Both the position numbers and the translations under genes were made by a program. DNA of 64,000 nt from Pristiophorus japonicus. Taxonomy: Eukaryota. The notes below the pieces were generated by a model. That model was not told the DNA's origin. It saw only the letters and a list, made by a program, of their open reading frames with translations, and made no database searches. Positions within the stretch are counted from its first letter, which is position 1; each line of letters opens with the position of its first letter. The stretch spans positions 85,622,001 through 85,686,000 of the forward strand of contig NC_091989.1 of assembly GCF_044704955.1 (NCBI RefSeq). Direction: 5' to 3'. Below, in pieces: positions 11,405 through 30,094 of this stretch.

Positions 11405-11459
11405 ATGGATTTGGGTGATGTTCTGCGGCGCATGTTGGTCCTGGACATGGTTTTTCTAT
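11405..11459 (+). CDS. Exon 1, signal peptide MDLGDVLRRMLVLDMVFL
   Basis: ATG at 11405 (alternative 11432). Phase-1 donor T|GTAAAA joins the V exon in frame (...VFLFVLRTSSKVTQ). Confidence 0.6.
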
Positions 11460-11818
11460 GTAAAAAGTCGTGTTTGTTATACATCGCCTTTTCTGAACAG
11501 GAAAGCACACGAAGCTAACCTTTACATGTGTTATAATGTTGCTTTTTGGCTATTGCTACATTTTCTGCATTTCATCCGTTTATGTAACTTTTTAAACACA
11601 CGTGTTTCTCAGTGGAATTTACAAAAAAATCTTAACGTATAAATGCGGAACTTAGAGAGCTACTTTAGGGAAGAAACACATTTCCAAGCGCTGAACTACT
11701 CTGACAGTTTTGTACGTGCAATCACTAATATATTAATTAGCTGGGCAGACGGTGGTATTTTGTCAGTAGCTTCCCGTGTATGAATGCTGCAGTCGAGTTT
11801 GGTTTTATTTAATTGCAG

Positions 11819-12130
11819 TTGTTCTTCGAACATCGTCCAAAGTTACTCAGATCGGGGAACGCAAGATGACGCTAGTTGGTTCAAATGTATCTTTCTATTG
11901 CACTTTCTCGCTTTCTGATGAGCAGGCAGAAATTACAGTGTCCTGGTGGCGACACGGTTACTATAGTTACTTAAAACCAGAGAGCAGGAAAGAGTTCCAT
12001 GCAAAGAGAAGCTCTAACAACTTTCACCTTCTGAATGTTAATATTCAGGAGGCCGGAATTTATTACTGTGCAGTGACATATCAGGGAAAATCAATGGGAA
12101 ACGGAACAGGTACATAACTTATTGTATATA
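11819..12130 (+). CDS. Exon 2, V-set domain with J-like G strand (contains in-frame TAA)
   Basis: Acceptor TTGCAG|. Motifs KVTQ, VSFYC, VSWW, EAGIYYCAV, GNGTGT*LIVY. Phase-1 donor A|GTAAGG at 12131. Confidence 0.9.
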
Positions 12131-12336
12131 GTAAGGGTCGAGTTGCATCTACATTGGTATTCAAACGGTATTTAATAAGGAAAGCAAAAGTATGATTTTT
12201 ATTGTTTTACAGGCTTTGTTTCCACGGAAATAAGGATGCTCGTTAAATGCATTTGTTATTTTAAATCTCGTTACTGCCAGCTTATTATATAACACATTAA
12301 GAACACGTTTTACATTGATTGTCTTATAGTTCAATG

Positions 12337-14841
12337 AATGGTACAGCAGTAATCATGGGCGACTTTAATCTACATATTGATTGGGCTAAACTAACTGGGA
12401 GCAATGCGGTGGAGGAGGATTTCCTGGAGTGTATTAGGGATGGTTTTCTAGAGCAATATGTCGAGGAACCAACCAGAGACCTGGTCATCCTAGACTGGGT
12501 GATGTGTAATGAGAAGGGACTAATTAGCAATCTTGTTGTGCGCGGTCCCTTGGTGAAGATTGACCATAATATGGTAGATTTGTTTATTAAGATGGAGAGT
12601 GACAAAGTTAATTAAGAAACTAGGGTCCTGAAGTGAAGGAAAGGTAACTTTGATGGTATGAGGCACGAATTGGCGAGATTAGACTGGCAAATTATACTTA
12701 AAGGATTGACGGTGGATCGGCAATGGAAAACTTTTAAAGATCACATGGATGAACTTCAATAATTGTACATCCCTGTCTGGAGTAAAAATAAAACGGGGAA
12801 GGTGGCTCAACCGTGGCTAACAAGGGAAATTGAGGATAGAGTTAAATCCAAGGAAGAGGCATGCAAATTAGCCAGAAAAAGCAGCAAACCAGAGGACTGG
12901 GAGACATTCAGAATTCAGTAGAGGAGCACAAAAAGTTTAATTAAGAGGGGGAAGATAGAGTACGACAGGAAGCTTGCAGGGAACATAAAAACTGACTGCA
13001 AAAGCTTCTATAAATATGTGAAGAGAAAAAGATTAGTGAAGACAAATGTAGGTCCCTTGCAGTTGGATTCGGATGAATTTATAATGGGGAACAAAGAAAT
13101 GGCAGAGCAATTGAACAAGTACTTCAGTTCTGTCTTCACAAAGGAAGACACAAATAACCTTCCGAATGTACTAGGGGACCGAGGGTCTAGTGAGAAGGAG
13201 GAACTGAAGGATACCCTTATTAAGCGGGAAATTGTGTTAGGAAAATTGACAGGATTGAAGGCCAATAAATCCCCAGGCCAGAGTACTTAAGGAATTGGCT
13301 CGAGAAATTGTGGTTTCATTGGTAATTTTCCAGCAGTCTATCGAATCAGGATCAGTTCTTATGGACTGGAGGATTGCCAATGTAACACCACTTTTCAAAA
13401 AAGGAGGGAGAGAGAAAACGGGCAATTATGGATTGGTTAGCCTGACATCAGTAGTGGGGAAAATGTTGGAATCAATCATTAAGGCTGAAATAGCAGCGCA
13501 TTTAGAAAGCAGCGATCGGATTAGTCCAAGTCAGCATGGAATTATGAAAGGGAAATCACGCTTGACAAATCTTCTGGAATTTTTTGAGGATGTAACTAGT
13601 CGAGTGGACAAGGGAGAACTAGTGAATGTGGACTTTCAAAAGGCTTTTGACAAGGTCCCACACAAGAGATTGGTGTGCAAAATCAAGGCAGAATGTAATG
13701 TACTGACGTGGATAGAGAACTGGTTGGTAGATAGGAAGCAGAGAGTCGGGATAAACGGGTCCTTTTCAGAATGGCAGGCACTGACTAGTGGAGTGCCGCA
13801 GTGCTCAGTGCTGGGACCCCAGCTCTTTACAATATATATTAGTGATTCAGAAGATGGAATGGAGTGTAATATCTCCAAATTTGCAGATGACACTACACTG
13901 GGTGGCGGTGTGAGCTGTGAGGAGGACTCTAGGAGGCTTCAGGGTGACTTGGACAGGTAAGGCGAGCGGGCAAATACATGTCAGATGCAATATAATGTGG
14001 ATAAATATGAGGTTATCCACTTTGGGGGCAAAAACACGAAGGTAGAATATTATCTGAATGGCGGCAGATTAGGAAAAGGGAAGGTGCAATGAGACCTGGG
14101 GGTCACGGTTCATCAGTCACTGAAAGTGGGCATGCAGGTACAGCAGGCGGTGAAGAACCCAAATGCTATGCTGGCCTTCTTAGCTAGGGGATTTGAATAC
14201 AGGAGTAGGGAGGTCTTACTGCAGTTGTACAGGGCCTTAGTGAGGCCACACCTGGAATATTGTGTGCAGTTTTGGTCTCCTAATCTGAAGAAGGACGTTC
14301 TTGCTATTGAGGGAGTGCAGTGAAGGTTCTCCAGACTGATTCCAGGGATAGCTGGACTGTCACATGAGGAGAGACTGGATCAACTGGGCCTTTATTCACT
14401 GGAGTTTAGAAGTATTGGAGGGGATCTCATATAAACGTATAAGATTCTGACGGGACTGGACAGGTTAGATGCGGGAAGAATGTTCCCAATGTTGGGGAAG
14501 TCCAGATCCAGGGGACATAGTCTTAGTTTAAGGAGTAGGCCATTTAGGACTGAGATGAGGAGAATCTTCTTCACTCAGCGAGTTGTTAACCTATGGAATT
14601 CCCTGCCACTGAGAGTTGTTGATGCCAGTTCATTGGATATATTCAAGCGGGAGTTAGATATGGCCCTTATGGCTAAGAGGATCAAGGGGTATGGAGAGAT
14701 AGCAGGAAAGGGGTACTGAGGTAATGATCAGCCATGATCTTATTGAATGGCGCTGCAGGTTCGAAGGGCAAAATGGCCTACTCCTGGAACTATTTTCTAT
14801 ATTTCTATATTTCTATGTTTCTATATTTCTATGTTTCTATG
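12337..14841 (+). mobile_element. 5'-truncated CR1 LINE in intron 2
   Basis: MGDFN...RT fragments (ORFs starting 12319, 13018, 13295, 14126, 14480) and a (TTCTATAT/TTCTATGT)n tail. Confidence 0.95.
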
Positions 14842-15186
14842 AAACGTTTTCCACTTGGGCCTCAATCAAAGGCCAATCCTGCTATCCTATCGGTTGCATC
14901 AATTAACGCAAAGAGCATACTTTTAATCAGATTTCATGGATAAAATGCATCGGTCATTTACCCCACTTCATGTTCTAGGCAATAATTTAGGTTCAGAGAT
15001 CATAGCATATAATCAGTAAATACCTTGGATTGGCTTTACTCGAAATCTTGAATTAAATGCATAACCCAGCCGATATTTGCTACTATAACATGCATGGCAC
15101 TTCAAAGTAATTCATCTCATATCAATCGCATTTGGCATGATAACGTCCTTTCTCCAATAATTATTCCCCATGCAGCTGCATCATCC

Positions 15187-15208
15187 ATCTATCTATCTAT
15201 CTATCTAT
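15187..15208. repeat. (ATCT)n microsatellite
   Basis: ATCTATCTATCTATCTATCTAT. Confidence 0.85.
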
Positions 15209-15737
15209 TATTGTTTTCAATAAAGATATGAGTTATTACGTCGAACGTGGATGTTAAGAAAAGATTTTGATTTTTCAACTGAAATGTTTTTCTTTTGCTT
15301 CCATTTCTATTTGTCCGTGTCGAGAATAGCCGAGATGCAAGCAATTAAGCATTTGCTTTGTCCTGACTGAGGTGTAACTGAGTGCTTCAATTCCCTAATA
15401 TCACAACAATATCTGCATATCTGCAGAATTTTCAACTACAACACGCAGATCTAAATACAGAAATAATAATATCTGCGGGCGAATAATGTCAAAGTAATTC
15501 AGCTATATTTAACGACAAAAATTATTTATAAAATAATATTTTTTGTAGCTTTATCAGAGGAAATTTGGAAATAAAATAAGTTCAAAATTATAATATGGCT
15601 GCATTCTAGATCAATGATAATTTCAGTTGCAATAAAAAATCTTGACGGGACATATTTTCATATATTTACCGTCAGGTTGATTTAAAATGAACGTTTTCCT
15701 TTTGTGTGTAATATTCGCCTGTGCTTCTTCAACAAAG

Positions 15738-16040
15738 CTGCTCCAGTTCCCTTGAAGATTCTCCTCAAAGCATCCGAAAGAGTTGTGCCTTCTCCTCTCA
15801 AACTGGAGTGCAGAACAGCCGGATTTTGCCCGAAGGAATTTAAACTCACTTGGCATAAAGATGGCATTGAACTTCTCTCTGGATTTGGAACAGTACAACA
15901 CATAAATGCGGATGGACTGTATGAAGTTTCCAGCTCTTTTGAAGGGGCACAGCCTGTCCAGAGCGAGGCATTTTATACCTGTGAAGTGTCGCATGTTTCT
16001 CTCCTAATCCCAGCCAGTGTTACCTACATTGCAGCCAAAG
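15738..16040 (+). CDS. Exon 3, C1-set Ig domain
   Basis: Acceptor AAAG|CT. Reads APVPLKI...LECRTAGFCPKEFKLTWHKDG...NADGLYEVSS...YTCEVSHVSL (C1 hallmarks GFxP and YxCxVxH). Phase-1 donor G|GTGATA. Confidence 0.9.
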
Positions 16041-16646
16041 GTGATATTTTTAACATGCATCTCACTTGTATCAGTCTGGTCATTTCGAGAAAAATCTATT
16101 TTCTCTTGTAACTAACTAACTAACTGCTGCTGCTTATTTGCATAATGTCGTTTCATCTTTCAAATATTGATTTATTGCAAGTCACAATAATGGGAAAAAT
16201 GCCCATCGTGTACTGGCTATCCGTCTGATGTTATGTAGGAAGGGCTGTTCCAATTAAATTCCTGGAGAATGTCAGTTTTCAATGGAAAATTTCCACAAAG
16301 CTAATAATTAGAATTACATTACATGTTGTTTGAGAAATAAACAACAAATGCGAAGTAAGAAAACAGTGTAATCACCAAGCTGAGAAACAAATCTTCCAGG
16401 AAATTTCCGACATTAATGCTTTCATAATCACAAAGTACACTGAGCTCAGGTACACTGCGCTGTACAATATGATCACTGCATGTGGCAACATGACAAATAT
16501 ATCAGTGATTTTCTCTGTTGGATTATTATGTGAAATTGCAAATATTTTGCTTTAGATTTCATGGTTTCTGAAGTTATACCGTGGCATGCAATTTCTTTTC
16601 CCTTTACATCCAGAGCTTCTAATCTTCATTTCATGTCACTTTTTAG

Positions 16647-16760
16647 GTAAATTCCAACATATAAGTTATGCTCTGATTGCTAGACTTACAGGTGGCGCAT
16701 TTGGCTTTAACCTGCTTACAATCATGATCGTTAAGCGAGTTCAATTCATTACCCGTGACG
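16647..16760 (+). CDS. Exon 4, transmembrane GKFQHISYALIARLTGGAFGFNLLTIMIVKRVQFITRD
   Basis: Acceptor TTTTAG|; hydrophobic stretch followed by KR; phase-1 donor G|GTAGGA. Confidence 0.8.
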
Positions 16761-16866
16761 GTAGGAACATTTTAGATTTTCTTCAACTTTCACTGATACT
16801 GTTTCTGATTAGATTGTGGTAGAATTAAGCATTGAACGAAATGTTTTACATAGATTAAAGTACTTA

Positions 16867-19800
16867 ATATCGGTGGAAGTTTATGTTTATGGTATTAAAT
16901 TCGGCGCTGCATGTAGCGATTCAAACTGCCGGTTGCTATCAATGTATTTAGAATGTACATCTGGAAATCAATCCATTTTAGTATACGCTGCATCAAAATC
17001 TCGATTATATAATTTGCTGCATTCATTAAAGGTATATAGAATTGCAGGTAATAAACAGCACAGAAACAAGTCATCTGACCCAACTAATCCGTGCTGGTGT
17101 ATCCACTCCACACAAGTCTTCCCCATTATATCTGCCTCAGCTCAGCCTTTCAGCATATAATTATATTCGCTTTTCTCTCATGTACTCGTCAAGATTAATT
17201 TTGAAAGCATCTAATCTATTTTTCTCAAACACTTCCTCCGGTAGCGATTTCCACATTCTAACCAGTTTCTGAGTAAATATATTGATCCTTGTTTCCCTAT
17301 TCGGATATTAGTGACTATATTGTATTTATGTCCGCTCTTTCAGTACACTCCCAAAATTGCAAATAATCTCTCCACAACCACCGTGTTCAATCCATCCACA
17401 ACTGAAAAGGCATGTATCGGGTCTCTTCTCTGTCTCCACTTCCCCGTTAGCTATAATCTCTCAGGTGCAGGACCTTCGTTGTAATTCTTTTTTTTGCATC
17501 TTTCGAAGTGCTTCTATGCACTTTTTATAGTATGGAGGCCACAACTGTGCAAAGTAATCCAGTGCGGCCTGACCAGGGTTATGTATAATTTTAACAGAAC
17601 TACATTACTTTTGAATTCTTTCCCAATAGAAAAAAGTCTCATTGCTTTGTGTGCATTTAATTCTTTTGCTGAACTGCGCTCATTTTAGTGATCTGATCAC
17701 GATTATCCCTCGACCACTTCGCTTTTCTACCCCATTCAGTTTCTGATTTTCAAAGATCAAGGTGATGCTTCTGTTTTGCTTACCGAAGTGCATCATCTCT
17801 CAAATATCTTCAAGATTTTGATATGTTAACGCTCATTTGAGGCATAACTTTACAGTCTGCAAGTTTTCAAACATCTACATTTATTATTTTCCTTCTTGCT
17901 GAATGCTGGTTGTAGCCCCTTGCTGATATCACCATGCAAACTTTGAAATTTGATTCCATATTCCTAATTTCACTTTTACATTATGAATAACAGTGATCGT
18001 GGCACTGATCTTTGTAGTATAGCACATTCTTACTTGCCATAATATGAAAAACTACACTTTAACCCTTCTCTATGCTTTTTCTTTGGCTATTCGATTCTTC
18101 CTTTTGCTTCCAAATATATAGTTGGGGGAATTTTTCCAAAACTATATTCAAAAGAATAATTTAAAAGCATTTTGGAATTGGAACATTTGATAATCCTCAT
18201 CAATTAACTGAACAGATGTAAATCAGGCAATTAAAGCATGTTACTGTTACCAAATTTGTGATGTAGCCATATTTAAGTTAATGTTTAGAATCTATGCTGA
18301 CTCATGCTGATCAATTGAGTTTATGTTAGAAATGTTGTCGAGTATTATTATTTGTGGTGATGTACACGTAATTGTCCTGTTTTAAATTGCCTGAAATTTG
18401 AAGAGAGGTTCACTGATTGCCAGCTTTGGCGCACTGCTAGAGGTTGGAAATCCTACAAGAACCCAACTGATTGCTTGCTATCTTAATACAAGAATCGTCG
18501 AATCAAAGATTTCAGGACCCAATAATGTGTCCATCGTAAGGCAGAATAAATACTTTAGTACCATTCTTCTTCGGTATGTAGTTGTCACCAACTTTTTTAC
18601 ATATCAATAGATTGGGATCTATAGTTGTTTGGATTTTAAGGCAAAAGGGATATAGGGATAGTGCAGGAAAGTAGAATTGAGGTAGATGATCAGCCATAAT
18701 CGTATTGAATGGTGGAGCAGCATCGAAGGGCCGACGGGTCTAAACCTGCTCCTGTTTCTCATGTTGTTTTATAAATGTTAAGTTTTGATTTCATAAATTG
18801 TAAAAAGTCAGCAGAGGCGTCAAAGAGTTGGATGCAGTGAGGATATTTCCACTCATAGGAGAAAATTAATCTTGGGGCCACAGTCTCAGAATAAGGGGCC
18901 GTCAATTTAAAGCTGAGATGAGGCTGAATTTCTTCTCGCAGAGGGTTATAAATCTGTGGAATTCTCTGCCTCAGAGTGCTTTGGAGGCTGGGTCATTGAA
19001 TATATTTCAGACGGAGATAGACAGATTTTGAGCGATAAGGGAGTAAATGGTTATAGGGAGCTGGCAAAGAAGTTGAGCTGAGTCCATGATCGGATGAGTA
19101 ATGATCTTATTAAATGGCGGAGCGGGCTCGAGGGGTCAAATGGCCTACACCTGCTCCATTTTCTTATGTTCTTATGAAGCTCTCATGGACATACTTAGAA
19201 ACCAGAAGGTGCTATTTAAATGGTATTCAATACCTCGTATTTTTATATTAATAACACATTTATGCAGCAATTAGTGGAAATCTTACATTGCTTCAGATCC
19301 GGGATATGTTTAAATCAAGTTAGCACTAATATTTGTTGAGAGGTTATGAGTTGCAATGTTTTATTCGGAGAATTGAGCTGAGATTGGATTTTCCCAAAGT
19401 GGACTGCCAATTGAGTGTAAATAAGCGTCAGCGCAGTGGGCCGCATTCAAGGTGGATCTCCTGAGGGTACAGAGCAAGTATGTTCCCTTAAGGATAAAGG
19501 TGGGCTAACAAACCTAGAGCACGCCAAATCTCAAGGGACATAGAGGGTAAGATAAAGAAAACAAGGGAAGCTTATGATAGATACCAAGAACTCAAAACTG
19601 CATCAACTCTAGAGAAGTATAAGAATTAAGGCGTGCAATTAATGAAGAAATCAGGAAAGCAAAGAGAGAGCATGAAAGAATGTTGGAAAGTAAAATCAGG
19701 GAAAACCCGAAGATGCTTTGTAAATACATTAAGAGCAAGAGGATAACTAGAGCAACCGTGGGGCCTATTAAAGACAAAAAAGAAAATCTATGTGTGGAGG

Positions 19801-22800
19801 CAGAAGACATGGGTATGATTCTTAATTAAAAGTTTGCATTTGTCTTCACAAAACATAGGGGTGATGAAGGCTCTGCAATGCGGGAGGAGGAGTGTGAAAT
19901 ATTAGACGAGGTAAACATAGTGAGAGAGGAAGTAATAACGGGCTAAATAAGACCAGCCATGATATTAAATTTCAGAGCAGGCTCGAGGAGTCAAATGGCC
20001 TATACCTAATCCGATTTTTTCTGTCCTTATTGAACTTGTTATGCCTGATGTTGCGTTATTAATTATCGCTGTGCAAGTAGAAATATCGAAGAAAATATTA
20101 AAATATACGTGTAAACAAGTCTTAATTTAGTATAAGTTTGGATTTATTATGACTGCTCTATATTTACATTTACATGCAGTATAAAAACGCATTTTGAATA
20201 ATTCAGTATAAATTCGCTGGGATAATGATATATTTATAAATTTCAGCCTCCTTATGTTTAGGATTAAAGCAAAGATTAGTAAATAAGACATTCGTTCACC
20301 GACAATTAACATTATACATTTCTCCCTACCTCATTTTTGATACAAAGACAATTAATTCCTTTCTAAATTATTAGTGCTTTCGTGAAAGAAATATAAGTTA
20401 AGACGCTTATGACATAACTAGAAATATTAAGCCTGATTGTGTGGTCGGCGGCGTGGCTAAGAAGCATGCTACTGACACCCGAACGACATCCTCTCATAAC
20501 CCGTGCGAACCCCGCTTCGTGAAGCTGCTGCAGAGTTGTGCACAGGGTAGTGGCCCACTGATCCCTTGTCGCAACGTTGTGCAAATGCGAACATGGGATC
20601 GTGTCGAGCGTTGTTCCTTGCACTTACTGACTCTTAGTCCATCAGGAATGAAAGAAAATATAAATCCCCGAGGCCACAGAACTATGCTTTGCAGAAAGTC
20701 CATCGAAGCAGTTGTCCATGTTTAATTTTACTCTCTTCAGTACATATTCCAAATGATTGCTTCAGCATTATGCATCGATTCTGATTCAGTTTGATACATT
20801 GAACAATTTGATTTTAGGATTCGGTGTTGAAATTGCTGAATATAAAAATAACAGCTCATTTTAAATAATTTAGCATTCGGAAATTGTAATTAATTAATAA
20901 ATTACGATTACTGTAAATGTAATATCCGTGGAAGTTTATGTTTATGGTATTAAGTTCGGTACTGCATGTAGTGATTCAAACCGCCGGTTGCTATCAATGT
21001 ATTTAGAACTTACATCTGGAAATCAATCCATTTTAGCATGCGCTAAATTGACATCTCGATAATATAATTTGCTGCGTTCATTAAATGTTTATAGAATTGC
21101 AGGTAATAAACAGCACAGAAACAGGTCATCTGACCCAACTTATCCATGCTGGTGTATCCACTCCACACAAGTCTTCCCCATTATATCTGCCTCAGCTCAG
21201 CCTTTCAGCATATAATTATATTCGCTTTTCTCTCATGTACTCGTCAAGATTAATTTTGAAAGCATCTAATCTATTTTTCTCAAACACTTCCTCCGGTAGC
21301 GATTTCCACATTCTAACCAGTTTCTGATTAAATATATTGATCCTTGTTTCCCTATTCAGATATTAGTGACTATTGTGTATTTATGTCCGCTCTTTTAGTA
21401 CACTCCCAAAATTGCAAATACTCTCTACACAACCACCGTGTTCAATTCATCCACAACTGAAAAGGCGTGTATCGGGTCTCTTCTACGTCTCCACTTCCCA
21501 GTTAGCTATAATCTCTCAGGTGCAGGACCTTCGTTGTAAGTATTTTTTCATCTTCCCCAGTGCTTCTATGCAATATTTATAGTATGGAATCCATAACTGT
21601 GCAAAGTAATCCAGTGTGGCCTGAGCAGAGTCATGTTCAATTTTAACTTTTGAATTCTTTCCGACTAGAAATAAGTCCCATTGTTTTCTGCGCATTTAAT
21701 TGTTTTGCTGAACTGCGCTAATTTTAATGATCTGATCACACATATCCCACGACCACTTCGCTTTTCTACCCCATTCAGTTTCTGACTTTCAAAGATCAAG
21801 GTGATGTTTCTGTTTTGCTTACCCAAGTGCATCATGTCTCAAATATCTTCAAGTTTTTAATATGTTAACGCTCATTTGACGCATAACTTTACAGTCTGCA
21901 AGTTTTCAAACGTCTACATTTATTATTTTCCTTCTTGCTGAATGCTAGTTATAGCCCCTTGCTGATATCACCTTGCAAATTTTGAAATTTCGTTCCTTTT
22001 TCCTAATTTCATATTTAAATTATGAATAACAGTGATCGTGGAACTGATCCTGGTGGAATACCACAATCTTACTTCCCACAATATGAAAAACTACACTTAA
22101 CCCTTCTCCATGCTTTTTCTTTGGCTATTCGATTCTTCCTTTTGCTATTCAATTCTTCCTTTTGCTTCCAACTTTATAATAGGGGAAACTTTTCCAAAAC
22201 TATACTCAAAAGAAAAATTTAAAAGCAGATTAAAATTTGACAACGTGACAATCCTCATCAATTAAGTGAACATATATAAATCAGGCAATTAAAGCCTGTT
22301 GCTGTTGCCACATTTTTGATGTATACATATTTAAGTTATATTTAGAATCTATGCTGATCAATTCATTTTATGTTAGAAATTTAATCTAGTATTATTATTT
22401 GTAATGATTTACATGTAATTGTTCTGTATTAAATTGCCTGAAATTTGAAGAGAGATTCACTGATCGCCAGATTTGACGCTCTGCTTGAGGTTGGAAATCC
22501 TACAAGAACCCAACTGATTGCTTGCTATCTTAATACAAGAATCGTCGATCATAAGGCACAATAAAAACTTTAGTACCATTCTTCTTCGATCTATAGTTGT
22601 CACCAACTGTTTTAATTATCGATAGATTGGGATCTATAGAAGTTTGGATGTTCAGGGGAAAGAGATTGGGAATAGTGCAGGAAAGTAGATTTGAGGTAGA
22701 AGATCAGCCATGATCGTATTGAATGGAGGAGCAGCATCGAAGGGCCGACGGGTCTAAATCAGATCCTATTTCTCATGTTCTTATATAAATGTTAAGTTCT

Positions 22801-24912
22801 GATTTCATAAATTGTAAAAAGAGAGCAGAGGTGTCAACGAGTTGGATGCAGTGAGGATATTTCCACTCATAGGAGAAAATAAATCTAGGCATTACAGTCT
22901 CAGAATAATGGGCCGTCAATTTAAAGCTGAGATGAGGCTGAATTTCTTCTCGCAGAGGGTTATAAATCTCTGAAATCTCTGCCTCAGAGTGCTTTGGAGG
23001 CTGGGTCATTGAATATATTTCAGACGGAGATAGACAGATTTTGAGCGATAAGGGAATAAACGGTTATGGGGAGCTGGCAAAGAAGTTGAGCTGAGTCCAG
23101 GATCAGATGAGTCATGATCTTATTAAATGGGAGAGCGGGCTCAAGGGGTCAAATGTCCTACTTCTGCTCCCTTTTCTTATGTTCTTATGAAGCTCTCATG
23201 GACATACTTAGGATCCAGAAGGTGCTATTTAAATGGTATTCAATACCTCGTATTTTATATTAATAAAGCATTTATGCAGCAATTACTGGAAATCTTACAT
23301 TGCATCAGATCCGGGATATGTTTAAACCAAGTTATCACTAATATTTGTTGAGAGGTTATGAGTTGCAATGTTTTATTCGCAGAATTGAGCTGAGATGGGA
23401 TTTGGCCAAAGTGGACTGCTAATTGAGTGTAAATAAGTGTCAGAGCAGGGGAACGCATTCAAGGTGTTTTCCTGAGGGTACATAGCAAGTATGTTCCCTT
23501 CAGGAAAAAGGTGGGCTAACAAACCTAGAGCACACCAAATCTCAAGGGACATACAGGGTAAGATAAAGAAAACAAGGGAAGCTCATGACAGATACCAAGA
23601 ACTCAAAATTGCATAAACTCTCGAGCCGTATGAGAAGTTAAGGGGTGCAATTAATAAAGAAATCAGGAAAGCAAAGAGAGAGTATGGTAGAATGTTGGAA
23701 AGTAAAATCAGGGAAAACGCAAAGATGCTTTATAAATACATTAAGTGCAAGAGGATAACTAGAGCAACCGTGGGGCCTATTAAAGACAAAAAATAAAATC
23801 TGTGTATGGAGGCAGAAGACGTGGATATGATTCTTAATGAATAGTTTGCATCTGTTTTCACAAAACATAGGGGTGATGAAGGCTCTGCAATGCGGGAGGA
23901 GGAGTGTGAAATAGTAGACGAGATAAACATAGTTAGAGAGGAAGTAATAACGGGTTTAATATGATCAGCCATTAAATGGCAGAGCAGGCTCGAGGAGTTA
24001 AGTGGCCTATTTCTAAAACTATTTCTTATGTCCTTATTGAATATGTTATGCATAATGTTGCATTATTAATTATCGCTGTGGAAGTAGATATATCAAAGAA
24101 GAAAATAGTAACATATACGCTTAAACAAGTCTTTATTTAGTGTAAGGTTGGATGTATTATTACTGTTCTATGTATACAGTTACATGTAGTATAAAAACAC
24201 TTTTTGATTAATTCAGTATAAATTCGCTGGGATAATGACGTGTTTATAAACTTCAGCCTCGTTTTGTTAAGAATTAAAGCAAAGATTAGTAAATAAGACA
24301 TTCGTTCACCGACAATTATCATTATACATTTTTGCCCACCTCATTTTTGATACAAAGATCATTAATTCCTTTCTAAATTATTTAGTGCTTTCATGAAACA
24401 AATATAAGTTAAGACGCTTATGACATAACTAGAAATATTAAGCCTGATTGTGTGGTCGGCGGTATGGCTAAGGAGCCACCGACACCCGAACGAAATCCTC
24501 ACATAACCCGTGTGAACCCCGCTTCATGAAGCTGCTGCAGATTTGTGGTCCACTGATCCCTTGGTGCAACGTTATGCAAATGCGAATATGGGATCATGTG
24601 GAGCGTTGTTCGTTGCACTTACTGAATCTTAGCCCATCAGGAAAGAAAGAAAATAGAAATCTTTGATGCAACAGAACTATGCTTTGCAGAAAGTCCATCT
24701 CAGCAGCTGTGCATGTTAAATTTTACTATCCTCACTGCATATTCCAAATGATTGCTTTAGCATTTTGCTTCAATTTCTGATTCAATTTGATACCTTGAAC
24801 AATTTGATATTAGGATTCGGTATTTAAATTGCTGATTATAAAGAGAACAGCTCATTTTAAATAATATAGCAATTGGAAATTTTATTTAATTAGTAAATTA
24901 CGATTACTGCAA
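16867..24912. repeat. Tandem duplication of a ~4.05-kb intronic unit (copy 1 ~16867-20915, copy 2 ~20921-24912) containing old CR1 fragments
   Basis: Both copies start AATATC.GTGGAAGTTTATGTTTATGGTATTAA and end AAATTACGATTACTG. They are colinear throughout; paired ORFs include 17042/21085 and 20127/24137. Confidence 0.95.
18516..18535 (+). CDS. Candidate phase 1-to-0 micro-exon (GPNNVSI); alternative acceptor at 18441
   Basis: TTTCAG|GACCCAATAATGTGTCCATC|GTAAGG would bridge the TM exon to the phase-0 tail exons. Polypyrimidine tract is weak. Confidence 0.25.
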
Positions 24913-25746
24913 TTATATTCAATACACAAACCAAGATTTCAACATTAATATAATTCTATCGAATATAGTATATCATGAGAGACTTTTTACCGAAGGGTTT
25001 CTTAAATCCATAAAATTCTATTATGATGCTTTATATCAGCTTTAGCATAAACGTAGCTAAAAATGATGCACTGTTCTCATCCCCCTGCCATCATGATGCG
25101 CAAAAGGCTGCTGCGCTTGTTTGCACTAGCTGTAAAAAAAATGCAGGTTATCGAATGCATAGTAGGGGCATAATTAGGCCAACTATTCACCGGCTCGTTG
25201 AATTCAATGGGTCGCTGAAACCTGCAGCAAAGTTAAGTGGAATTGGAATTTGACAAATCACATGTTCTTGATTCAGCGCAACTGGTCAATTTCAGAAGCA
25301 GTGTGATGGTGCACTCAGTCTTGACATCATCAAACCAACCGTGAATTAAAGGCAAAGGATCAGCACAAATGGCTAAACTGCAACAAACGGACCTTATGAT
25401 CCAATGGGCCTGTTTCTATGCAATAACTTATTTAATTACTTGACTATATTTCTCTTTAGATTCCTTGTGGAATTTTACCAATAACGATGGGCATGAGGAG
25501 GGGCTAAGATTACTATTGTTACCAAAAATGGACACTAAATATAATGATTTGTTACTCATGACAAAGTTGCAATTTGTGAATATGTTTCGCACAACAATCC
25601 TCCCAACTCTTCAATTTTATATAATATGGAAATGTAGCAGAAGGATTTTGAAGTATTCCCCTGGAATTCCCATGAGGTTCTATTGAACTTCAGCAGTTCA
25701 ATATAACCTCCTATACTGAGGAAAAGGGACCTGAGTTTTATTTTAT

Positions 25747-27753
25747 TTGCCTGCCACGAAAGCTTTGAACAAGGCTACAAATAGCATAAAAGGGAAGGTG
25801 GCTCAACCGTGGCTATCAAGGGAAATCAGGGATAGCATTAAAGCCAAGGAAGTGGCATACAAATTGGCCAGAAATAGCAGCGAACCTGGGGACTGGGAGA
25901 AATTTAGAACTCAGCAGAAGAGGACAAAGGGTTTGATTAGGGCAGGGAAAATGGAGTACGAGAAGAAGCTTGCAGGGAACATTAAGACGGATTGCAAAAG
26001 TTTCTATAGATATGTAAAGAGAAAAAGGTTAGTAAAGACAAACGTAGGTCCCCTGCAGTCAGAATCAGGGGAAGTCATAACGGGGAACAAAGAAATGGCG
26101 GACCAATTGAACAAGTACTTTGGTTCGGTATTCACTGAGGAGGACACAAACAACCTTCCGGATATAAAAGGGGTCGGAGGGTCTAGTAAGGAGGAGGAAC
26201 TGAGGGAAATCCTTATTAGTCGGGAAATTGTGTTGGGGAAATTGATGGGATTGAAGGCCGATAAATCCCCAGGGCCTGATGGACTGTATCCCAGAGTACT
26301 TAAGGAGGTGGCCTTGGAAATAGTGGATGCATTGACAGTCATTTTCCAACATTCCATTGACTCTGGATCAGTTCCTATGGAGTGGAGGGTAGCCAATGTA
26401 ACCCCACTTTTTAAAAAAGGAGGGAGAGAGAAAACAGGGAATTACAGACCGGTCAGCCTGACATCAGTAGTGGGTAAAATGATGGAATCAATTATTAAGG
26501 ATGTCATAGCAGTGCATTTGGAAAGAGGTAATATGATAGGTCCAAGTCAGCATGGATTTGTGAAAGGGAAATCATGCTTGATAAATCTTCTGGAATTTTT
26601 TGAGGATGTTTCCAGTAGAGTGGACAAGGGAGAACCAGTTGATGTGGTATATTTGGACTTTCAGAAGGCTTTCAACAAGGTCCCACACAAGAGATTAATG
26701 TGCAAAGTTAAAGCACATGGGATTGGGGGTAGTGTGCTGACATGGATTGAGAACTGGTTGTCAGACAGGAAGCAAAGAGTAGGAGTAAATGGGGACTTTT
26801 CAGAATGGCAGGCAGTGACTAGTGGGGTACCACAAGGTTCTGTGCTGGGGCCCCAGCTGTTTACATTGTACATTAATGATTTAGACGAGGGGATTAAATG
26901 TAGTATCTCCAAATTTGCGGATGACACTAAGTTGGGTGGCAGTGTGAGCTGCAAGGAGGATTCTATGAGGCTGCAGAGCGACTTGGATAGGTTAGGTGAG
27001 TGGGCAAATGCATGGCAGATGAAGTATAATGTGGATAAATGTGAGGTTATCCACTTTGGTGGTAAAAACAGAGAGACAGACTATTATCTGAATGGTGACA
27101 GATTAGGAAAAGGGGAGGTGCAAAGAGACCTGGGTGTCATGGTACATCAGTCATTGAAGGTTGGCATGCAGGTACAGCAGGCGGTTAAGAAAGCAAATGG
27201 CATGTTGGCCTTCATAGCGAGGGGATTTGAGTACAAGGGCAGGGAGGTGTTGCTACAATTGTACAGGGCCTTGGTGAGGCCACAACTGGAGTATTGTGTA
27301 CAGTTTTGGTCTCCTAACCTGAGGAAGGACATTCTTGCTATTGAGGGAGTGCTGCGAAGGTTCACCAGACTGATTCCCGGGATGGCGGGACTGACCTATC
27401 AAGAAAGACTGGATCAACTGGGCTTGTATTCACTGGAGTTCAGAAGAATGAGAGGGGACCTCATAGAAACGTTTAAAATTCTGATGGGGTTAGACAGGTT
27501 AGATGCAGGAAGAATGTTCCCAATGTTGGGGAAGCCCAGAACCAGGGGACACAGTCTAAGGATAAGGGGGAAGCCATTTAGGACCGAGATGAGGAGGAAT
27601 TTCTTCACCCAGAGAGTGGTGAACCTGTGGAATTCTCTACCACAGAAAGTTGTTGAGGCCAATTCACTAAATATATTCAAAAAGGAGTTAGATGAAGTCC
27701 TTACTACTAGGGGAATCAAGGGGTATGGTGAGAAAGCAGGAATGGGGTACTGA
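25747..27753 (+). CDS. CR1 ORF2 C-terminal part (reverse transcriptase), intact 668-aa frame lacking the endonuclease
   Basis: YRPVSLTS, QHGF, YLDFQKAF, GVPQGSVLGP, KFADD. The first ~14 codons come from flanking DNA. Confidence 0.9.
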   Translation: MPATKALNKATNSIKGKVAQPWLSREIRDSIKAKEVAYKLARNSSEPGDWEKFRTQQKRTKGLIRAGKMEYEKKLAGNIKTDCKSFYRYVKRKRLVKTNVGPLQSESGEVITGNKEMADQLNKYFGSVFTEEDTNNLPDIKGVGGSSKEEELREILISREIVLGKLMGLKADKSPGPDGLYPRVLKEVALEIVDALTVIFQHSIDSGSVPMEWRVANVTPLFKKGGREKTGNYRPVSLTSVVGKMMESIIKDVIAVHLERGNMIGPSQHGFVKGKSCLINLLEFFEDVSSRVDKGEPVDVVYLDFQKAFNKVPHKRLMCKVKAHGIGGSVLTWIENWLSDRKQRVGVNGDFSEWQAVTSGVPQGSVLGPQLFTLYINDLDEGIKCSISKFADDTKLGGSVSCKEDSMRLQSDLDRLGEWANAWQMKYNVDKCEVIHFGGKNRETDYYLNGDRLGKGEVQRDLGVMVHQSLKVGMQVQQAVKKANGMLAFIARGFEYKGREVLLQLYRALVRPQLEYCVQFWSPNLRKDILAIEGVLRRFTRLIPGMAGLTYQERLDQLGLYSLEFRRMRGDLIETFKILMGLDRLDAGRMFPMLGKPRTRGHSLRIRGKPFRTEMRRNFFTQRVVNLWNSLPQKVVEANSLNIFKKELDEVLTTRGIKGYGEKAGMGY

Positions 27754-27850
27754 AGTTGCATGTTCAGCCATGAACTCATTGAATGGCGGTGCAGGCTAGA
27801 AGGGCCGAATGGCCTACTCCTGCACCTATTTTCTATGTTTCTATGTTTCT
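25788..27850 (+). mobile_element. Young 5'-truncated CR1 LINE
   Basis: Uninterrupted RT frame, (TTCTATGT)n tail, and a possible TAGCAT target-site duplication (25782-25787 and 27850-27855). Confidence 0.95.
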
Positions 27851-28229
27851 AGCATCAGTAGGCTTAGCGGCAATGAGTCACGCTCCATTTTGAAAGGGGG
27901 CTCTTATTGGGTGTCCAAAGCACTTGCCTGTTTAAGGATGTCGGCCAGTTAAATAAGGAATTCGGGATACAATGACATAAACAGGACCCAGAATTACACT
28001 TTAGGTCAGAACAGGACATAGCCTGTGAACAGTTCCATTAGTAATGGAATAATGGCTCAAAGAGGCACACAGGTAATTGTGAAATTACGTGTGTATCCTG
28101 GCTGCGAAGGAGTAGCAATTTGCCATGCTGGTAATTTTGCTGGCCCAATTTTGGGAGGTCCGTTTGACGCCCCATAACTATCTTCTTTGTTAATGAAGCC
28201 AGTGTCTCAAAATGGCGGCCGGCTCTTCG

Positions 28230-29511
28230 TTTATCGAAGTTATGGCAGACGTTCGCGAGGACTCATGTGAAAATTCATCCCATTTGTCCCTAAATCCTGA
28301 AAGGTTATTGGTTTCTCACCCGTGAGAAGTGCGAAGCATTCCCTTCCTTATTTCTTCTTTCATCCACTTTCTTGCAACCAGCTACGTTATTCGTAGGGAA
28401 AGGCGGAGGCTCCTCAATTCCTGATCGTATCCACTGTAAAATTAAACAAATGGGTCAAGTAAGAGGCTCATTATAATTCTAATATAAGTGGAACATTATG
28501 TTCCCAGTCAGCAGACCTCTATAGAAAAAAAACAGTGTGTCTTGATGAGAGAACGGCAATAGTTCAAACTTGTACAGTGCTTGAAGCTACAGGATAAATT
28601 GTTTCATCCGTATGGACGACGAAGACCAGCGAACACTCCGCCAGTCCGTCAGCCAAATCGTAAATTCGACACCGAACTGCATAAACTGGGGTAATTTTGA
28701 AATTGTCCAATAGTGTAAATGGCATGACATATGCTCAAACACTAGATATATAAATCTCCTAGTTTCCCTTCCCACTTAAGTAAATGTAAATGTAAATGGA
28801 AGTATTTAACAAACAGGAAGGCTAGTGGATATTGCATGTTTTACAATTTGGTTTGAAGGCAAAATTAATGCCACTGTCTATTTTTGCCGTTTGTAGCGTT
28901 TCCCCCGATTTGGGTTGGTTGGTCATTTGAGAAAGTGGTCAGACAAATTCTAGGCGTGCATGGCATATTTATGTGCGATATAATGAAGGAGATGCTCAGC
29001 TATCAGAAATGCTTGAATGTGATACTGATACAAGTGATTGGCTTAATATCTAGTACCTTTCAATAGAAAATGGAATACGTTTTGCACTATTGCTAGGACG
29101 GATACATGTGTTCTCAGTTAAACATAAATACGGATGAAACAATTTATCCTGTAGCTTCAAGCACTGTACAAGTTTGACCTATTGCCGTTCTCTCATCAAG
29201 ACACACTGTTTTTTTTCTATAGAGGTCTGCTGACTGGGAACATAATGTTCCACTTATATTAGAATTATAATGAGCCTCTTACTTGACCCATTTGTTTAAT
29301 TTTACAGTGGATACGATCAGGAATTGAGGAGCCTCCGCCTTTCCCTACGAATAACGTAGCTGGTTGCAAGAAAGTGGATGAAAGAAGAAATAAGGAAGGG
29401 AATGCTTCGCACTTCTCACGGGTGAGAAACCAATTACCTTTCAGGATTTAGGGACAAATGGGATGAATTTTCACATGAGTCCTCGCGAACGTCTGCCATA
29501 ACTTCGATAAA
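28230..29511. repeat. 384-bp inverted repeat (28230-28613 and 29128-29511) with a 514-bp spacer
   Basis: The arms are reverse complements; only two mismatches were seen by eye. Confidence 0.95.
29308..29421 (+). CDS. Candidate cytoplasmic exon WIRSGIEEPPPFPTNNVAGCKKVDERRNKEGNASHFSR (alternative phase-1 acceptor at 29321)
   Basis: TTTAATTTTACAG| acceptor, open 38-codon frame, CGG|GTGAGA phase-0 donor in frame with the next exon. Confidence 0.55.
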
Positions 29512-29735
29512 AGAGTCGCCAAAATCCCTTGGAAAAAGAAACAGAGTAAATGCCCTTTCTTCGATTTCAGCAAAGCCTCCAAGAAGGAAGAGTGGCAGCA
29601 ACCCCACTACAATTCCCCTCAAACTCTTCACATTTCAGCACTTCTTCGCTCTAGCTGCTCCATATAATGTGTGTGTAAAAGTCAATAAAACACAAAATCG
29701 ATGACCAAACGACTCTCAAACATTTGGTTTTACAG

Positions 29736-29846
29736 GAGGAAAAAGGGACAACTGATTACAAGCTGACATATGCGGATCTGGAATTGACCGCCTCGAAGAA
29801 AACTGCAAAGGCTTCAAAAAAGGAACAGAACGAAGTGTACTCACAG
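29736..29846 (+). CDS. Cytoplasmic exon with ITIM LTYADL
   Basis: TTTTACAG|EEKGTTDYKLTYADLELTASKKTAKASKKEQNEVYSQ|GTAAAG, phase 0/0. Confidence 0.85.
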
Positions 29847-29992
29847 GTAAAGCTGAAAATCTACGTTGAAATCAGTGATTTTGGTTTATATTAAAATAGA
29901 CTAAACACGTATTTTATAAATTATGAGGACGGGTTATTTCAATGGTCAGATTACAAAAAAGACGAACTCTATGTTTAATGTTCTTGTCACAG

Positions 29993-30094
29993 GTCAAACA
30001 GCAAGCTGCTGGTAACAGGCTGGCATACGTGTCTTTGCAGACGACTCTCAACAACACGACAGGACCTAATGTGAAAGGAAAGTTCGCAGTTTAG
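29993..30094 (+). CDS. Terminal exon with ITIM LAYVSL
   Basis: TTGTCACAG|VKQQAAGNRLAYVSLQTTLNNTTGPNVKGKFAV*. Completes EVYSQV across the junction. Confidence 0.8.
   Translation, partial: VKQQAAGNRLAYVSLQTTLNNTTGPNVKGKFAV

What the first reader, a model, noticed from the sequence alone, without database searches (positions are those of the whole stretch)
11405..30094. Non-rearranging antigen-receptor-like gene: germline-joined VJ + C1 + TM + inhibitory tail
Seen: one exon encodes a complete V domain including a J-like G strand (YYCAV...GNGTGT*LIV), followed by a C1-set exon, a TM exon and ITIM exons. No CACAGTG heptamer with nonamer flanks the V exon. Established: C1-set domains are largely restricted to Ig, TCR, MHC, B2M, tapasin and SIRPs; NKp30 has a similar GxGxGT.L.V G strand; mammalian SIRPalpha is V-C1-C1. 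Inference: a V-C1 ectodomain like a TCR or light chain, wired to an ITIM tail, is the architecture proposed for the pre-RAG ancestor of antigen receptors. It may belong to a poorly described paired-receptor family in cartilaginous fish. The ORF track shows only the V, C1 and TM pieces and misses the leader and tail exons.
Basis: partly seen in the sequence, partly recalled or inferred. Interest (0 to 1): 0.8.

Follow-up and report, generated by a model that had tools for sequence, protein, structure and literature searches.

The report
Broken shark SIRP-like V-C1 receptor gene
This is a real non-rearranging immune-receptor gene (an antibody-like V domain, one C1 domain, a membrane anchor and inhibitory-tail exons) from a large SIRP-like family of sharks, rays and chimaeras, but this copy has a stop codon inside its V domain, so it is most likely a recently disabled copy and not a hidden ancestral antigen receptor.

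Summary
No RSS flanks the V exon. Three corrections apply.

1. The "*" in GNGTGT*LIV is a real in-frame TAA (12115-12117), upstream of the family's usual V-exon donor.
2. The V domain is short: 57 residues Cys to Cys. It passes Pfam's I-set threshold, not V-set.
3. The TM exon (phase 1) does not join the ITIM exon (phase 0) in frame, and no linking exon could be verified.

All four exon types match a multigene family predicted in sharks, rays and a chimaera. NCBI auto-names it [quoted passage not shown] (SIRP-alpha-like) among other contradictory names. In a C1 tree the window sits inside this family (support 99). The family groups with the first C1 domains of bony-vertebrate SIRPs (support 93, few outgroups).

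Apart from the stop the ectodomain keeps 37 of 40 consensus residues, so the inactivation is recent, or a null allele, or an assembly error. No RNA runs were listed.

This scan had already found this family many times on other DNA of the same genome, both intact and dead copies. Verdict: an ordinary, probably dead member of a known kind.

The parts
11405..11459 (+). Candidate split-leader exon (MDLGDVLRRMLVLDMVFL plus 1 base; donor T|GTAAAA, phase 1)
   Evidence: Read from the sequence. It aligns in the same columns as the family leaders (M..L....M..L..I/M.) in a local MAFFT add-alignment. It carries R, R and D inside the hydrophobic core, so it is a weak signal peptide. Not verified by RNA.
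11819..12130 (+). V-like exon with a fused J-like G strand (acceptor ttgcag|TT, phase 1; canonical donor A|GTAAGG at 12131)
   Evidence: tblastn/BLASTP to family members gives E down to 5e-24. Pfam: I-set 27.5 bits, V-set 22.2 bits. The exon end after ...VY is the same as in the Heterodontus relative, where an isoform skips exactly the C1 exon.
12115..12117 (+). In-frame TAA stop inside the J-like motif (G-T-G-T-*-L-I-V)
   Evidence: In all tblastn alignments this codon aligns with a sense residue, mostly Q, R or K. That is consistent with a single-base change such as CAA to TAA (inference).
12110..12115 (+). Alternative upstream donor G|GTACAT (exon would end at 12109, also phase 1). It would bypass the stop but delete the xLxV half of strand G.
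   Evidence: Read from the sequence. No evidence that it is used.
15738..16040 (+). C1-set exon (phase 1 to phase 1)
   Evidence: Pfam C1-set 37.7 bits, E 2.6e-9. The best single-domain PDB matches include SIRP-gamma and SIRP-alpha d2. At most 52% identity to family members. It lies inside the family clade in the C1 tree.
16647..16760 (+). TM and juxtamembrane exon (KFQHISYALIARLTGGAFGFNLLTIMIVKRVQFITRD; donor G|GTAGGA, phase 1). Arg sits at the column used by the Arg-TM members.
   Evidence: BLASTP to P0161 gives 55% over 29 aa, E 1e-5. The Arg aligns with the Arg of P0165, P0005, P0016, P0035, P0168 and others. If unspliced, the frame reads on to a TAG at 16820-16822 and gives a short tail.
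29571..29674 (+). Unverified candidate linking exon (phase 1 to 0; acceptor tttcag|CA; donors AAT|GTGTGT or TGT|GTAAAA)
   Evidence: The phases fit. Its peptide scores no better against the family than shuffled versions: best 20.6 bits, equal to the shuffle median. Listed only because some such exon is needed for an in-frame ITIM tail.
29736..29846 (+). ITIM module exon (EEKGTTDYKLTYADLELTASKKTAKASKKEQNEVYSQ; ITIM LTYADL at 29763-29780; phase 0 to 0)
   Evidence: It aligns with the repeated tail modules of family members at 45-50% identity (E 1e-7 to 7e-8).
29993..30094 (+). Last coding exon (VKQQAAGNRLAYVSLQTTLNNTTGPNVKGKFAV*; ITIM LAYVSL at 30020-30037; TAG at 30092-30094)
   Evidence: Weak match to the first half of a tail module (E 0.02).

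Best explanation
The locus is one member of a multigene family of non-rearranging IgSF receptors in cartilaginous fish. The gene order is split leader, short V-type domain with a germline-fused J-like strand (GxG[T/S]xLxV), one C1-set domain, a TM segment, and a tail built of repeated ITIM modules. Databases auto-label the family SIRP-alpha/beta-like.

Intact members most likely work as paired receptors of the SIRP/KIR type (inferred, not shown). ITIM forms would recruit SH2 phosphatases after tyrosine phosphorylation. Arg-TM short-tail forms would pair with an ITAM adaptor.

This copy carries a premature TAA in the last strand of its V domain, upstream of the family's V-exon donor. A normally spliced mRNA would therefore stop before C1, TM and tail. 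The other coding exons are still well preserved, so the inactivation is recent: a young pseudogene or a null allele. The copy also combines a TM arginine with ITIM exons 13 kb downstream, and their in-frame connection could not be shown.
For: Family membership. A HMMER scan of 1.84 billion representatives with the C1 exon alone gave 116 hits at E<=1e-10. The single-C1 hits of 250-400 aa have the C1 at about residues 120-220, behind a V domain ending in ...NGTGSxLxV|(V/A)PPTPLKI. Their sources are Heterodontus, Chiloscyllium, Heptranchias, Stegostoma, Scyliorhinus, Mustelus, Amblyraja, Pristis, Hemitrygon, Mobula and Callorhinchus. Their names are mostly 'tyrosine-protein phosphatase non-receptor type substrate 1-like'. 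One relative (P0012) matches the window's V, C1, TM and ITIM exons in order. In the C1 tree the family is one clade (SH-aLRT 99) with the window inside it.

Stop codon. TAA lies at 12115-12117 and aligns to a sense residue in every relative. The family donor lies after ...VY, downstream of the stop, as shown by the C1-skipping isoform pair P0161/P0171.

Recent inactivation. The window keeps 37 of 40 consensus ectodomain positions, mid-range for annotated members. There are no other stops or frameshifts in the V, C1, TM or ITIM exons.

Paired-receptor design. 8 of 24 aligned members carry Arg at one TM column, mostly with short tails. The others have tails with LTYAxL / TEYAxI-type motifs.
Against: No read or RNA evidence exists for this locus: no run was listed. 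The TAA could therefore be an assembly error or a heterozygous variant. An upstream phase-1 donor (G|GTACAT, exon end 12109) could in principle bypass the stop. The good preservation of the exons also fits a still-functional gene. The join from TM exon to ITIM exon is out of frame without an unidentified exon, so the 'ITIM tail' may not belong to the same transcript. Signalling functions are inferred from motifs only.
Confidence: 0.68

Rival explanations
1. The gene is functional. Either the TAA is an assembly or sequencing error or one allele of a polymorphism, or the upstream donor at 12109/12110 is used. The locus would then encode a working V-C1 receptor.
For: The ectodomain keeps 37/40 consensus residues. 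All splice sites of the V, C1, TM and ITIM exons are canonical AG/GT. There is only one lesion. The alternative donor is in the same phase.
Against: The stop is in the assembled sequence. Using the upstream donor would remove the xLxV half of strand G, which is conserved in 21-23 of 24 relatives, and no relative ends its V exon there. The TM-to-tail frame problem remains.
Confidence: 0.2
2. Before it was hit by the stop, this copy was, or was becoming, an activating-type member. It would have an Arg in the TM and a short tail made by reading through the TM exon to the TAG at 16820-16822. The ITIM exons 13 kb downstream would be fossil or orphan exons no longer spliced in. This does not exclude the best explanation.
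For: Arg sits at the same TM column as in the short-tailed members. The TM exon in phase 1 and the ITIM exon in phase 0 do not join in frame. The candidate linking exon has no support. The intervening 13 kb holds a LINE and a 4-kb tandem duplication. Earlier notes of this scan describe Arg-TM copies with eroded tails elsewhere in this genome (not verified by me).
Against: Both ITIM exons are intact, with good splice sites and a terminal stop. The C-terminal half of the TM (LLTIMIVKR) is of the inhibitory type, 55% identical to P0161. At least one annotated relative (P0035) combines a TM Arg with an ITIM tail.
Confidence: 0.25
3. One reading: a unique relic of the pre-RAG antigen-receptor ancestor, closer to TCR/IgL than to any characterised receptor.
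For: The V(J-like)-C1 layout has no RSS. A family profile scores Ig light chains, UrIg2 and SIRP-alpha in the same range, so a deep link to antigen receptors is not excluded.
Against: It is not unique. Dozens of paralogues and orthologues exist across chondrichthyans, and there are many copies in this genome according to earlier notes. In the sampled tree, C1 groups with bony-vertebrate SIRP C1 domains and not with the IgH, Ig-lambda-like, MR1-like or beta2m-like C1 domains. The tail motifs are of the SIRP-alpha type. This copy is broken.
Confidence: 0.03

Closest known systems
Predicted chondrichthyan 'tyrosine-protein phosphatase non-receptor type substrate 1-like' / 'SIRP beta-1-like' proteins (e.g. 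XP_067905931.1 Heterodontus francisci = P0012; XP_072403667.1 Chiloscyllium punctatum = P0005; XP_067853494.1 Heptranchias perlo = P0039; Callorhinchus A0A4W3H4Z2 = P0031)
   Same: They share the exon order and motifs: split leader, short V with ...YYC...GxGTG(S/T)xLxV(Y/H), C1 starting (A/P)P(V/T)PLKI, a TM of the (I/L)IAGCAGG type or with Arg, and tail modules K.QG...LTYA.L....K.....VYA. The window's V, C1, TM and ITIM exons each match them, and the window's C1 is nested in their clade.
   Different: The window's copy is at most 52% (C1) and 49% (V) identical to any retrieved member. It has a stop codon in the V exon, an Arg in an otherwise inhibitory-type TM, and an unresolved TM-to-tail junction.
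Tetrapod SIRP-alpha/beta/gamma (SHPS-1; PDB 2wng, 4i2x; rodent SIRP-alpha P0174)
   Same: Both have a non-rearranging V with a J-like strand followed by a C1-set domain. Both families are paired inhibitory/activating. SIRP-alpha's tail carries ITYADL...TEYASI...LTYADL...SEYASV, and the window has LTYADL. hhalign of the family profile against SIRP-alpha gives Prob 99.2%, E 2e-19, collinear from V d1 into C1 d2. The family C1 groups with the first C1 of rodent, coelacanth and lungfish SIRP(-like) proteins at SH-aLRT 93.
   Different: SIRPs have V-C1-C1, whereas here there is one C1. The V is 10 residues shorter in the C'-C'' region, and the family's V-domain profile scores the V domain of rodent SIRP-alpha at only 15 bits. 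The activating forms use Arg here, and Lys in SIRP-beta (the latter from my own knowledge). Orthology, synteny and CD47 binding were not tested. A 2026 survey dates the SIRP family to Tetrapoda (PMC13262535).
UrIg / UrIg2 (non-rearranging elasmobranch VJ-C1 genes; PMC12227049; PDB 9dmx)
   Same: Non-rearranging, with a single VJ exon, a split leader and C1-type domains, and found in cartilaginous fish. The family profile hits UrIg2 at 118 bits over three domains.
   Different: Nurse shark UrIg2 has nine C1-type domains, and UrIg also has several C domains. Neither paper passage read here mentions an ITIM tail, and the V is a typical full-length VJ. The window's gene has one C1 and an ITIM-module tail. 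Per domain, the UrIg2 match (48 bits for V-C1) is no better than that of Ig light chains.
NKp30 / NCR3
   Same: A non-rearranging V-like domain with a G-rich J-like strand. A TM Arg in NKp30 (from my own knowledge).
   Different: NKp30 has no C1 domain. The window V exon against PDB NKp30 chains gives only E 0.08-0.1, weaker than NCAM2, CD79a or TCR hits.
Teleost NITRs and PRARPs (other VJ-fused IgSF receptors)
   Same: A V domain with a J-like motif, a TM and ITIM, and paired inhibitory/activating forms. They are named as a group with SIRP, CD8, CD79 and NKp30 in PMC11599192. PRARP is cited in PMC10751288.
   Different: From my own knowledge, the second domain of NITRs is I-type and not C1-set, and PRARPs are V-only or V-C2. 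No NITR or PRARP sequence was available here, so this was not tested.

Membership tests
IgSF C1-set domain (window 15738-16040) | Pfam PF07654 at or above the gathering score | tested here: met
   37.7 bits against a cut-off of 21, E 2.6e-9.
IgSF C1-set domain (window 15738-16040) | 13 residues between the Cys of strand B and the Trp of strand C (criterion in PMC2785349) | tested here: met
   C-RTAGFCPKEFKLT-W has 13 residues between them (translation).
IgSF C1-set domain (window 15738-16040) | (F/Y)(F/Y/H)P at the start of the BC loop | tested here: inconclusive
   The window has FCP and the family consensus is FYP. SIRP-alpha d2 has FSP according to PMC2785349. The middle residue is therefore off-pattern and is an extra Cys.
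IgSF C1-set domain (window 15738-16040) | x-V-x-H after the Cys of strand F | tested here: met
   YTCEVSH.
Chondrichthyan SIRP-like V(J)-C1 receptor family | V exon homologous to the family V and ending GxG(T/S)xLxV(Y/H) at a phase-1 donor | tested here: met
   E 5e-24 to family V domains. The motif is G-T-G-T-*-L-I-V-Y followed by A|GTAAGG. The exon end is the same as in the P0161/P0171 isoform pair.
Chondrichthyan SIRP-like V(J)-C1 receptor family | C1 domain inside the family clade | tested here: met
   The family of 31 rows forms one clade, SH-aLRT 99, with the window inside a subclade at 91. This was a quick IQ-TREE search on 99 columns.
Chondrichthyan SIRP-like V(J)-C1 receptor family | Family-type TM and ITIM tail modules downstream on the same strand | tested here: met
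   TM is 55% identical over 29 aa, E 1e-5. The ITIM module is 45-50% identical, E about 1e-7.
Chondrichthyan SIRP-like V(J)-C1 receptor family | Open reading frame through all exons (a working member) | tested here: not met
   TAA at 12115-12117. TM (phase 1) to ITIM exon (phase 0) is not in frame, and the candidate linker is unsupported.
SIRP family proper (tetrapod SIRP-alpha/beta/gamma) | Three-domain ectodomain V-C1-C1 | tested here: not met
   There is only one C1 exon between V and TM. tblastn of the C1 exon against the whole window finds no second copy. Most relatives also have one C1.
SIRP family proper (tetrapod SIRP-alpha/beta/gamma) | C1 and V domains closest to SIRP domains in phylogeny | tested here: inconclusive
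   C1: the family joins the first C1 of rodent, coelacanth and lungfish SIRP(-like) proteins at SH-aLRT 93, but there were no TCR, shark IgL, MHC II or tapasin rows. V: the family's V-domain profile scores the SIRP-alpha V at only 15 bits. hhalign is collinear at Prob 99.2%, without a control V-C1 protein. The profile against PDB ranks SIRP-alpha (97.5 bits) among Ig chains and UrIg2.
SIRP family proper (tetrapod SIRP-alpha/beta/gamma) | Cytoplasmic tail with paired (I/L)TYADL and (T/S)EYAS(I/V) tyrosine motifs | tested here: inconclusive
   The window has LTYADL (identical to one SIRP-alpha motif), EVYSQV (not an ITIM or ITSM) and LAYVSL. Relatives have LTYAxL plus TEYAx(I/L) pairs.
SIRP family proper (tetrapod SIRP-alpha/beta/gamma) | Conserved synteny with the SIRP locus; binding of CD47 | not testable with these tools
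Binding needs an experiment.
Rearranging antigen-receptor V gene segment (Ig/TCR) | Recombination signal sequence (heptamer, 12/23 spacer, nonamer) at the 3' end of V; separate J segment | tested here: not met
   There is no CACAGTG/CACTGTG within 10.5-17.5 kb. No heptamer (up to 1 mismatch) with spacer and nonamer (up to 2 mismatches) occurs anywhere in the window. The J-like strand is fused in the V exon.
NKp30 (NCR3) | Single V-like domain with no C1 domain; significant sequence similarity | tested here: not met
   A C1 exon follows the V exon. PDB NKp30 chains score E 0.08-0.1 against the window V exon.
UrIg / UrIg2 | VJ domain followed by several C1-type domains (nine in nurse shark UrIg2, PMC12227049) | tested here: not met
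   There is one C1 exon. The per-domain score to UrIg2 is not above that of Ig chains.
NITR (teleost novel immune-type receptors) | V(J)-I-TM-ITIM, with an I-type second domain | not tested
   No NITR sequence was retrieved by any search. The second domain here is C1-set, which argues against membership on my own knowledge of NITRs.

The most novel reading that the evidence does not exclude
The chondrichthyan V(J)-C1 family to which this copy belongs may be the true sister, or the ancestral two-domain form, of tetrapod SIRPs. That would move the origin of SIRP-type myeloid checkpoint receptors to the base of jawed vertebrates. It would also give a living example of the V-C1 non-rearranging receptor proposed as the antigen-receptor precursor. 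This particular copy, with a TM arginine, inhibitory-type TM flank and still-intact ITIM exons, would then be a snapshot of an inhibitory-to-activating conversion that was cut short by a nonsense mutation.
Probability: 0.15. Interest if true: 0.55.

Novelty: new member of a known kind. Interest (0 to 1): 0.28.

Why it matters
For the locus itself, little: it is one probably dead copy in a large gene cluster.

For the family, somewhat more. Every cartilaginous-fish genome sampled carries non-rearranging V(J-like)-C1 receptors with SIRP-alpha-style inhibitory tails and Arg-TM partners. Databases give them contradictory automatic names: SIRP-alpha-like, tapasin-related, CD276, Ig lambda-like, MHC class II beta-like. 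I found no paper in the searchable library that describes them, and a 2026 survey dates SIRPs to tetrapods. A curated description would bear on when SIRP-type receptors arose and on the V-C1 precursor hypothesis of antigen receptors. Broken copies like this one document the birth-and-death turnover typical of such families.

Tried and rejected
Splicing and the reality of the TAA are untested.

I obtained no genomic loci of relatives, no synteny and no dN/dS.

3. The search for homologous proteins with the V exon alone found nothing, because it only sees proteins of 52-165 aa.

4. Candidate linking exon 29571-29674. Its 'AK...SNPTT' looked like the family's 'AKRNSLNPTQ', but BLAST-short gave 20.6 bits, equal to the median of 200 shuffles. 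It is rejected as evidence.

5. The apparent similarity of the read-through after the TM exon (GRNILDFLQ) to KRNSLNPTQ of P0161 is too weak to use.

6. A family profile against PDB does not separate SIRP-alpha from Ig chains and UrIg2.

7. Foldseek of an AlphaFold model of relative P0012 puts ICOS-L, B7-H6 and Ig light chains on top. This is a generic V-C architecture and is not diagnostic.

8. Hydrophobic similarity of the ORF just upstream of the V acceptor to family leaders is attributed to the polypyrimidine tract. There is no in-frame ATG.

9. One literature search on 'PRARP' alone returned only urology and other unrelated papers.

In some searches the exon translations were laid in one row, separated by X, only for a local alignment to A1.

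Full report
**1. What is in the sequence**

- A candidate leader runs from 11405 to 11459, with donor T|GTAAAA in phase 1.
- The V-like exon runs from 11819 to 12130, with acceptor ttgcag and donor A|GTAAGG, in phase 1.
- The C1 exon runs from 15738 to 16040, phase 1 at both ends.
- The TM exon runs from 16647 to 16760, with donor G|GTAGGA in phase 1.
- An ITIM exon runs from 29736 to 29846, phase 0 at both ends, and carries LTYADL.
- The last exon runs from 29993 to 30094. It carries LAYVSL and ends in TAG.

tblastn of each exon against the whole window finds no second copy. The rest of the window is mostly LINE fragments. No heptamer or heptamer-spacer-nonamer lies near the V exon or anywhere in the window.

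**2. The stop codon**

The '*' is a TAA at 12115-12117. It occupies the variable position of the J-like motif G-x-G-T-x-L-x-V. In every tblastn alignment with relatives it faces a sense residue, mostly Q, R or K, for example GTGLQLLVY, GTGVQLVVY and GTGSRLIVH.

The family's V exon ends after ...V(Y/H). This is shown by a Heterodontus isoform pair in which exactly the C1 exon is skipped...QLVVY|DVIPTNQ against ...QLVVY|AAPTPMN...NK|DVIPTNQ. The normal donor therefore lies downstream of the stop.

An upstream GT (G|GTACAT, exon end 12109) is in the same phase and would bypass the stop. It would also delete the xLxV half of strand G, which is conserved in 21-23 of 24 relatives.

**3. The domains**

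The C1 exon is a genuine C1-set domain. Pfam gives 37.7 bits against a cut-off of 21. It has 13 residues between Cys and Trp and the C-x-V-x-H motif, two of the hallmarks listed by Hatherley et al. 2009 (PMC2785349). The third hallmark reads FCP here, where the family has FYP.

The V exon is a short V-type domain, 57 residues Cys to Cys against 67 in rodent SIRP-alpha. It scores above Pfam's I-set threshold and below V-set. hhalign against SIRP-alpha places two gaps (10 and 4 residues) in the C'-C'' region. An AlphaFold model of relative P0012 (ectodomain pLDDT mostly 85-96) has no C'' strand.

**4. The family**

The C1 exon alone, scanned against 1.84 billion representative proteins, gave 418 hits at E<=1e-3 and 116 at E<=1e-10. 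The best single-C1 hits are proteins of 250-400 aa with V(J-like)-C1-TM and either ITIM tails or an Arg-TM with a short tail.

They come from sharks, skates and rays, and a chimaera. Their automatic names are inconsistent. SIRP-alpha-like is the commonest. Others are SIRP-beta-1-like, tapasin-related, CD276 homolog, NCR3LG1-like, Ig lambda-like and MHC class II beta-like.

One relative (P0012) matches the window's V, C1, TM and ITIM exons in order. This is the evidence, by homology, that these exons form one gene.

The window's copy is divergent: at most 52% identity in C1 and 49% in V to any retrieved member. Even so it keeps 37 of 40 consensus ectodomain positions, mid-range for annotated members.

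**5. Relation to known families**

I built a C1-domain tree of 95 rows with a quick IQ-TREE search on 99 columns. The chondrichthyan family is one clade (SH-aLRT 99). The window branches at the base of a subclade containing both shark and batoid members (91). The family joins the first C1 domains of rodent SIRP-alpha and of coelacanth and lungfish SIRP-like proteins (93). IgH-like, Ig-lambda-like, MR1-like and beta2m-like C1 domains lie apart.

The reference rows were only those my searches returned. TCR, shark IgL, MHC II, tapasin, NKp30 and NITR are missing, so this is suggestive and not decisive.

Other comparisons do not settle the question.
- hhalign of the family profile against SIRP-alpha is collinear from V into C1 (Prob 99.2%, E 2e-19).
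- A profile search of PDB puts SIRP-alpha (97.5 bits) in the same range as Ig chains and UrIg2.
- Foldseek gives generic V-C matches.
- The NKp30 similarity of the V exon is not significant (E about 0.1).

The tail motifs are the most SIRP-like trait. The window has LTYADL, and relatives have LTYAxL plus TEYAx(I/L) pairs. Rodent SIRP-alpha has ITYADL/TEYASI/LTYADL/SEYASV.

The family fails the V-C1-C1 definition of SIRPs. I therefore file it as 'SIRP-like' and not as SIRP. It also fails the definitions of UrIg/UrIg2 (several C domains), of NKp30 (no C1) and of rearranging V segments (no RSS).

**6. The tail problem and the TM arginine**

The TM exon ends in phase 1 and the ITIM exon begins in phase 0. 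A direct join gives a frameshift and an early stop. A phase 1-to-0 exon is needed between them.

The one candidate I found (29571-29674) has no similarity beyond shuffled controls. The 13 kb between the exons contains a LINE with a 668-codon RT ORF, a 4-kb tandem duplication and a 387-nt inverted repeat.

The TM segment has an Arg at exactly the column where 8 of 24 aligned relatives have theirs, mostly short-tailed and presumably activating. Its C-terminal half is of the inhibitory type. One annotated relative (P0035) also combines Arg with an ITIM tail.

I therefore keep as a non-exclusive rival that this copy was an Arg-TM form whose ITIM exons are no longer used.

**7. Mechanism**

What is shown is sequence architecture and family membership.

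What is inferred is function. Intact ITIM members would act as inhibitory receptors by recruiting SH2-domain phosphatases, as established for ITIMs in general and SIRP-alpha in particular. Arg-TM members would signal through an acidic-TM ITAM adaptor.

For this copy, a normally spliced mRNA would terminate in strand G of the V domain. No receptor would then be made, unless the TAA is an assembly error or an allele.

**8. Literature**

The link between a V-C1 SIRP-type receptor and the antigen-receptor precursor is published (PMC2785349). Other non-rearranging VJ genes are known: UrIg/UrIg2 (PMC12227049), and NKp30 and PRARP (PMC10751288; PMC11599192).

In six searches on this topic I found no paper describing this chondrichthyan family. 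A 2026 survey lists the SIRP family under Tetrapoda (PMC13262535). The library is partial, so absence of a paper is not proven.

**9. Earlier notes of this scan**

The same family has been noted many times in this genome: 21 notes matched 'SIRP'. They include a similar gene 940 bases beyond this window's end, intact six- to eight-exon genes, dead copies, and Arg-TM copies with eroded tails.

I treated these notes as leads. My family assignment rests on my own searches. The notes agree with it, and they also suggested the rival about fossil tails.

**10. Limits**

- No RNA or DNA run was listed.
- The species was not identified.
- Exons were searched one by one. In some searches exon translations were placed in one row, separated by X, for a local alignment only.

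**Verdict**

The locus is a probably recently inactivated member of a known, computer-predicted SIRP-like receptor family of cartilaginous fish.

Noticed in passing
window 16865-20780 and 20920-24775: A tandem duplication of about 4 kb (eleven collinear blocks, 85-94% identical, spacing about 4010-4058) lies inside the long intron between the TM exon and the tail exons. It starts about 100 nt after the TM exon, which is not itself duplicated.
   Followed up: partly
window 28227-28613 and 29128-29514: An inverted repeat of 387 nt is 99% complementary, with 514 nt between the arms. It ends 57 nt upstream of the candidate linking exon and about 220 nt upstream of the ITIM exon. It is probably a foldback or transposon structure.
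   Followed up: partly
window 25747-27753 (+); also 12319-14719 (+), 6056-8960 (+), 32507-32935 (-), 40140-40592 (+), 44201-46757 (-): There are many copies of one LINE family. The copy in the TM-tail intron keeps a 668-codon ORF with an RVT_1 domain (114.9 bits). A decayed copy with RVT_1 (76.2 bits) fills much of the V-C1 intron.
   Followed up: partly
window 16667-16690: The TM segment has Arg (ALIARLTGG) at the column where the short-tailed family members have Arg, and an Asn further in (FGFNLL). The flanking sequence and the downstream exons are of the inhibitory type.
   Followed up: partly
window 15815-15823: The C1 BC-loop motif reads FCP where the family has FYP. This adds an unpaired cysteine to the domain.
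   Followed up: no
proteins P0002, P0006, P0022 (white shark, Heptranchias, stingray): Long proteins with many C1-type domains in tandem and a TM motif like AWLWTITAVGALTVYTVILIV were among the better hits to the C1 exon. One is auto-named 'titin-like'. They may be UrIg2-type genes. I did not check.
   Followed up: no
window 52859-53638 (-): A 259-codon ORF of low-complexity S/P/L-rich sequence, probably a simple repeat and not a gene.
   Followed up: no
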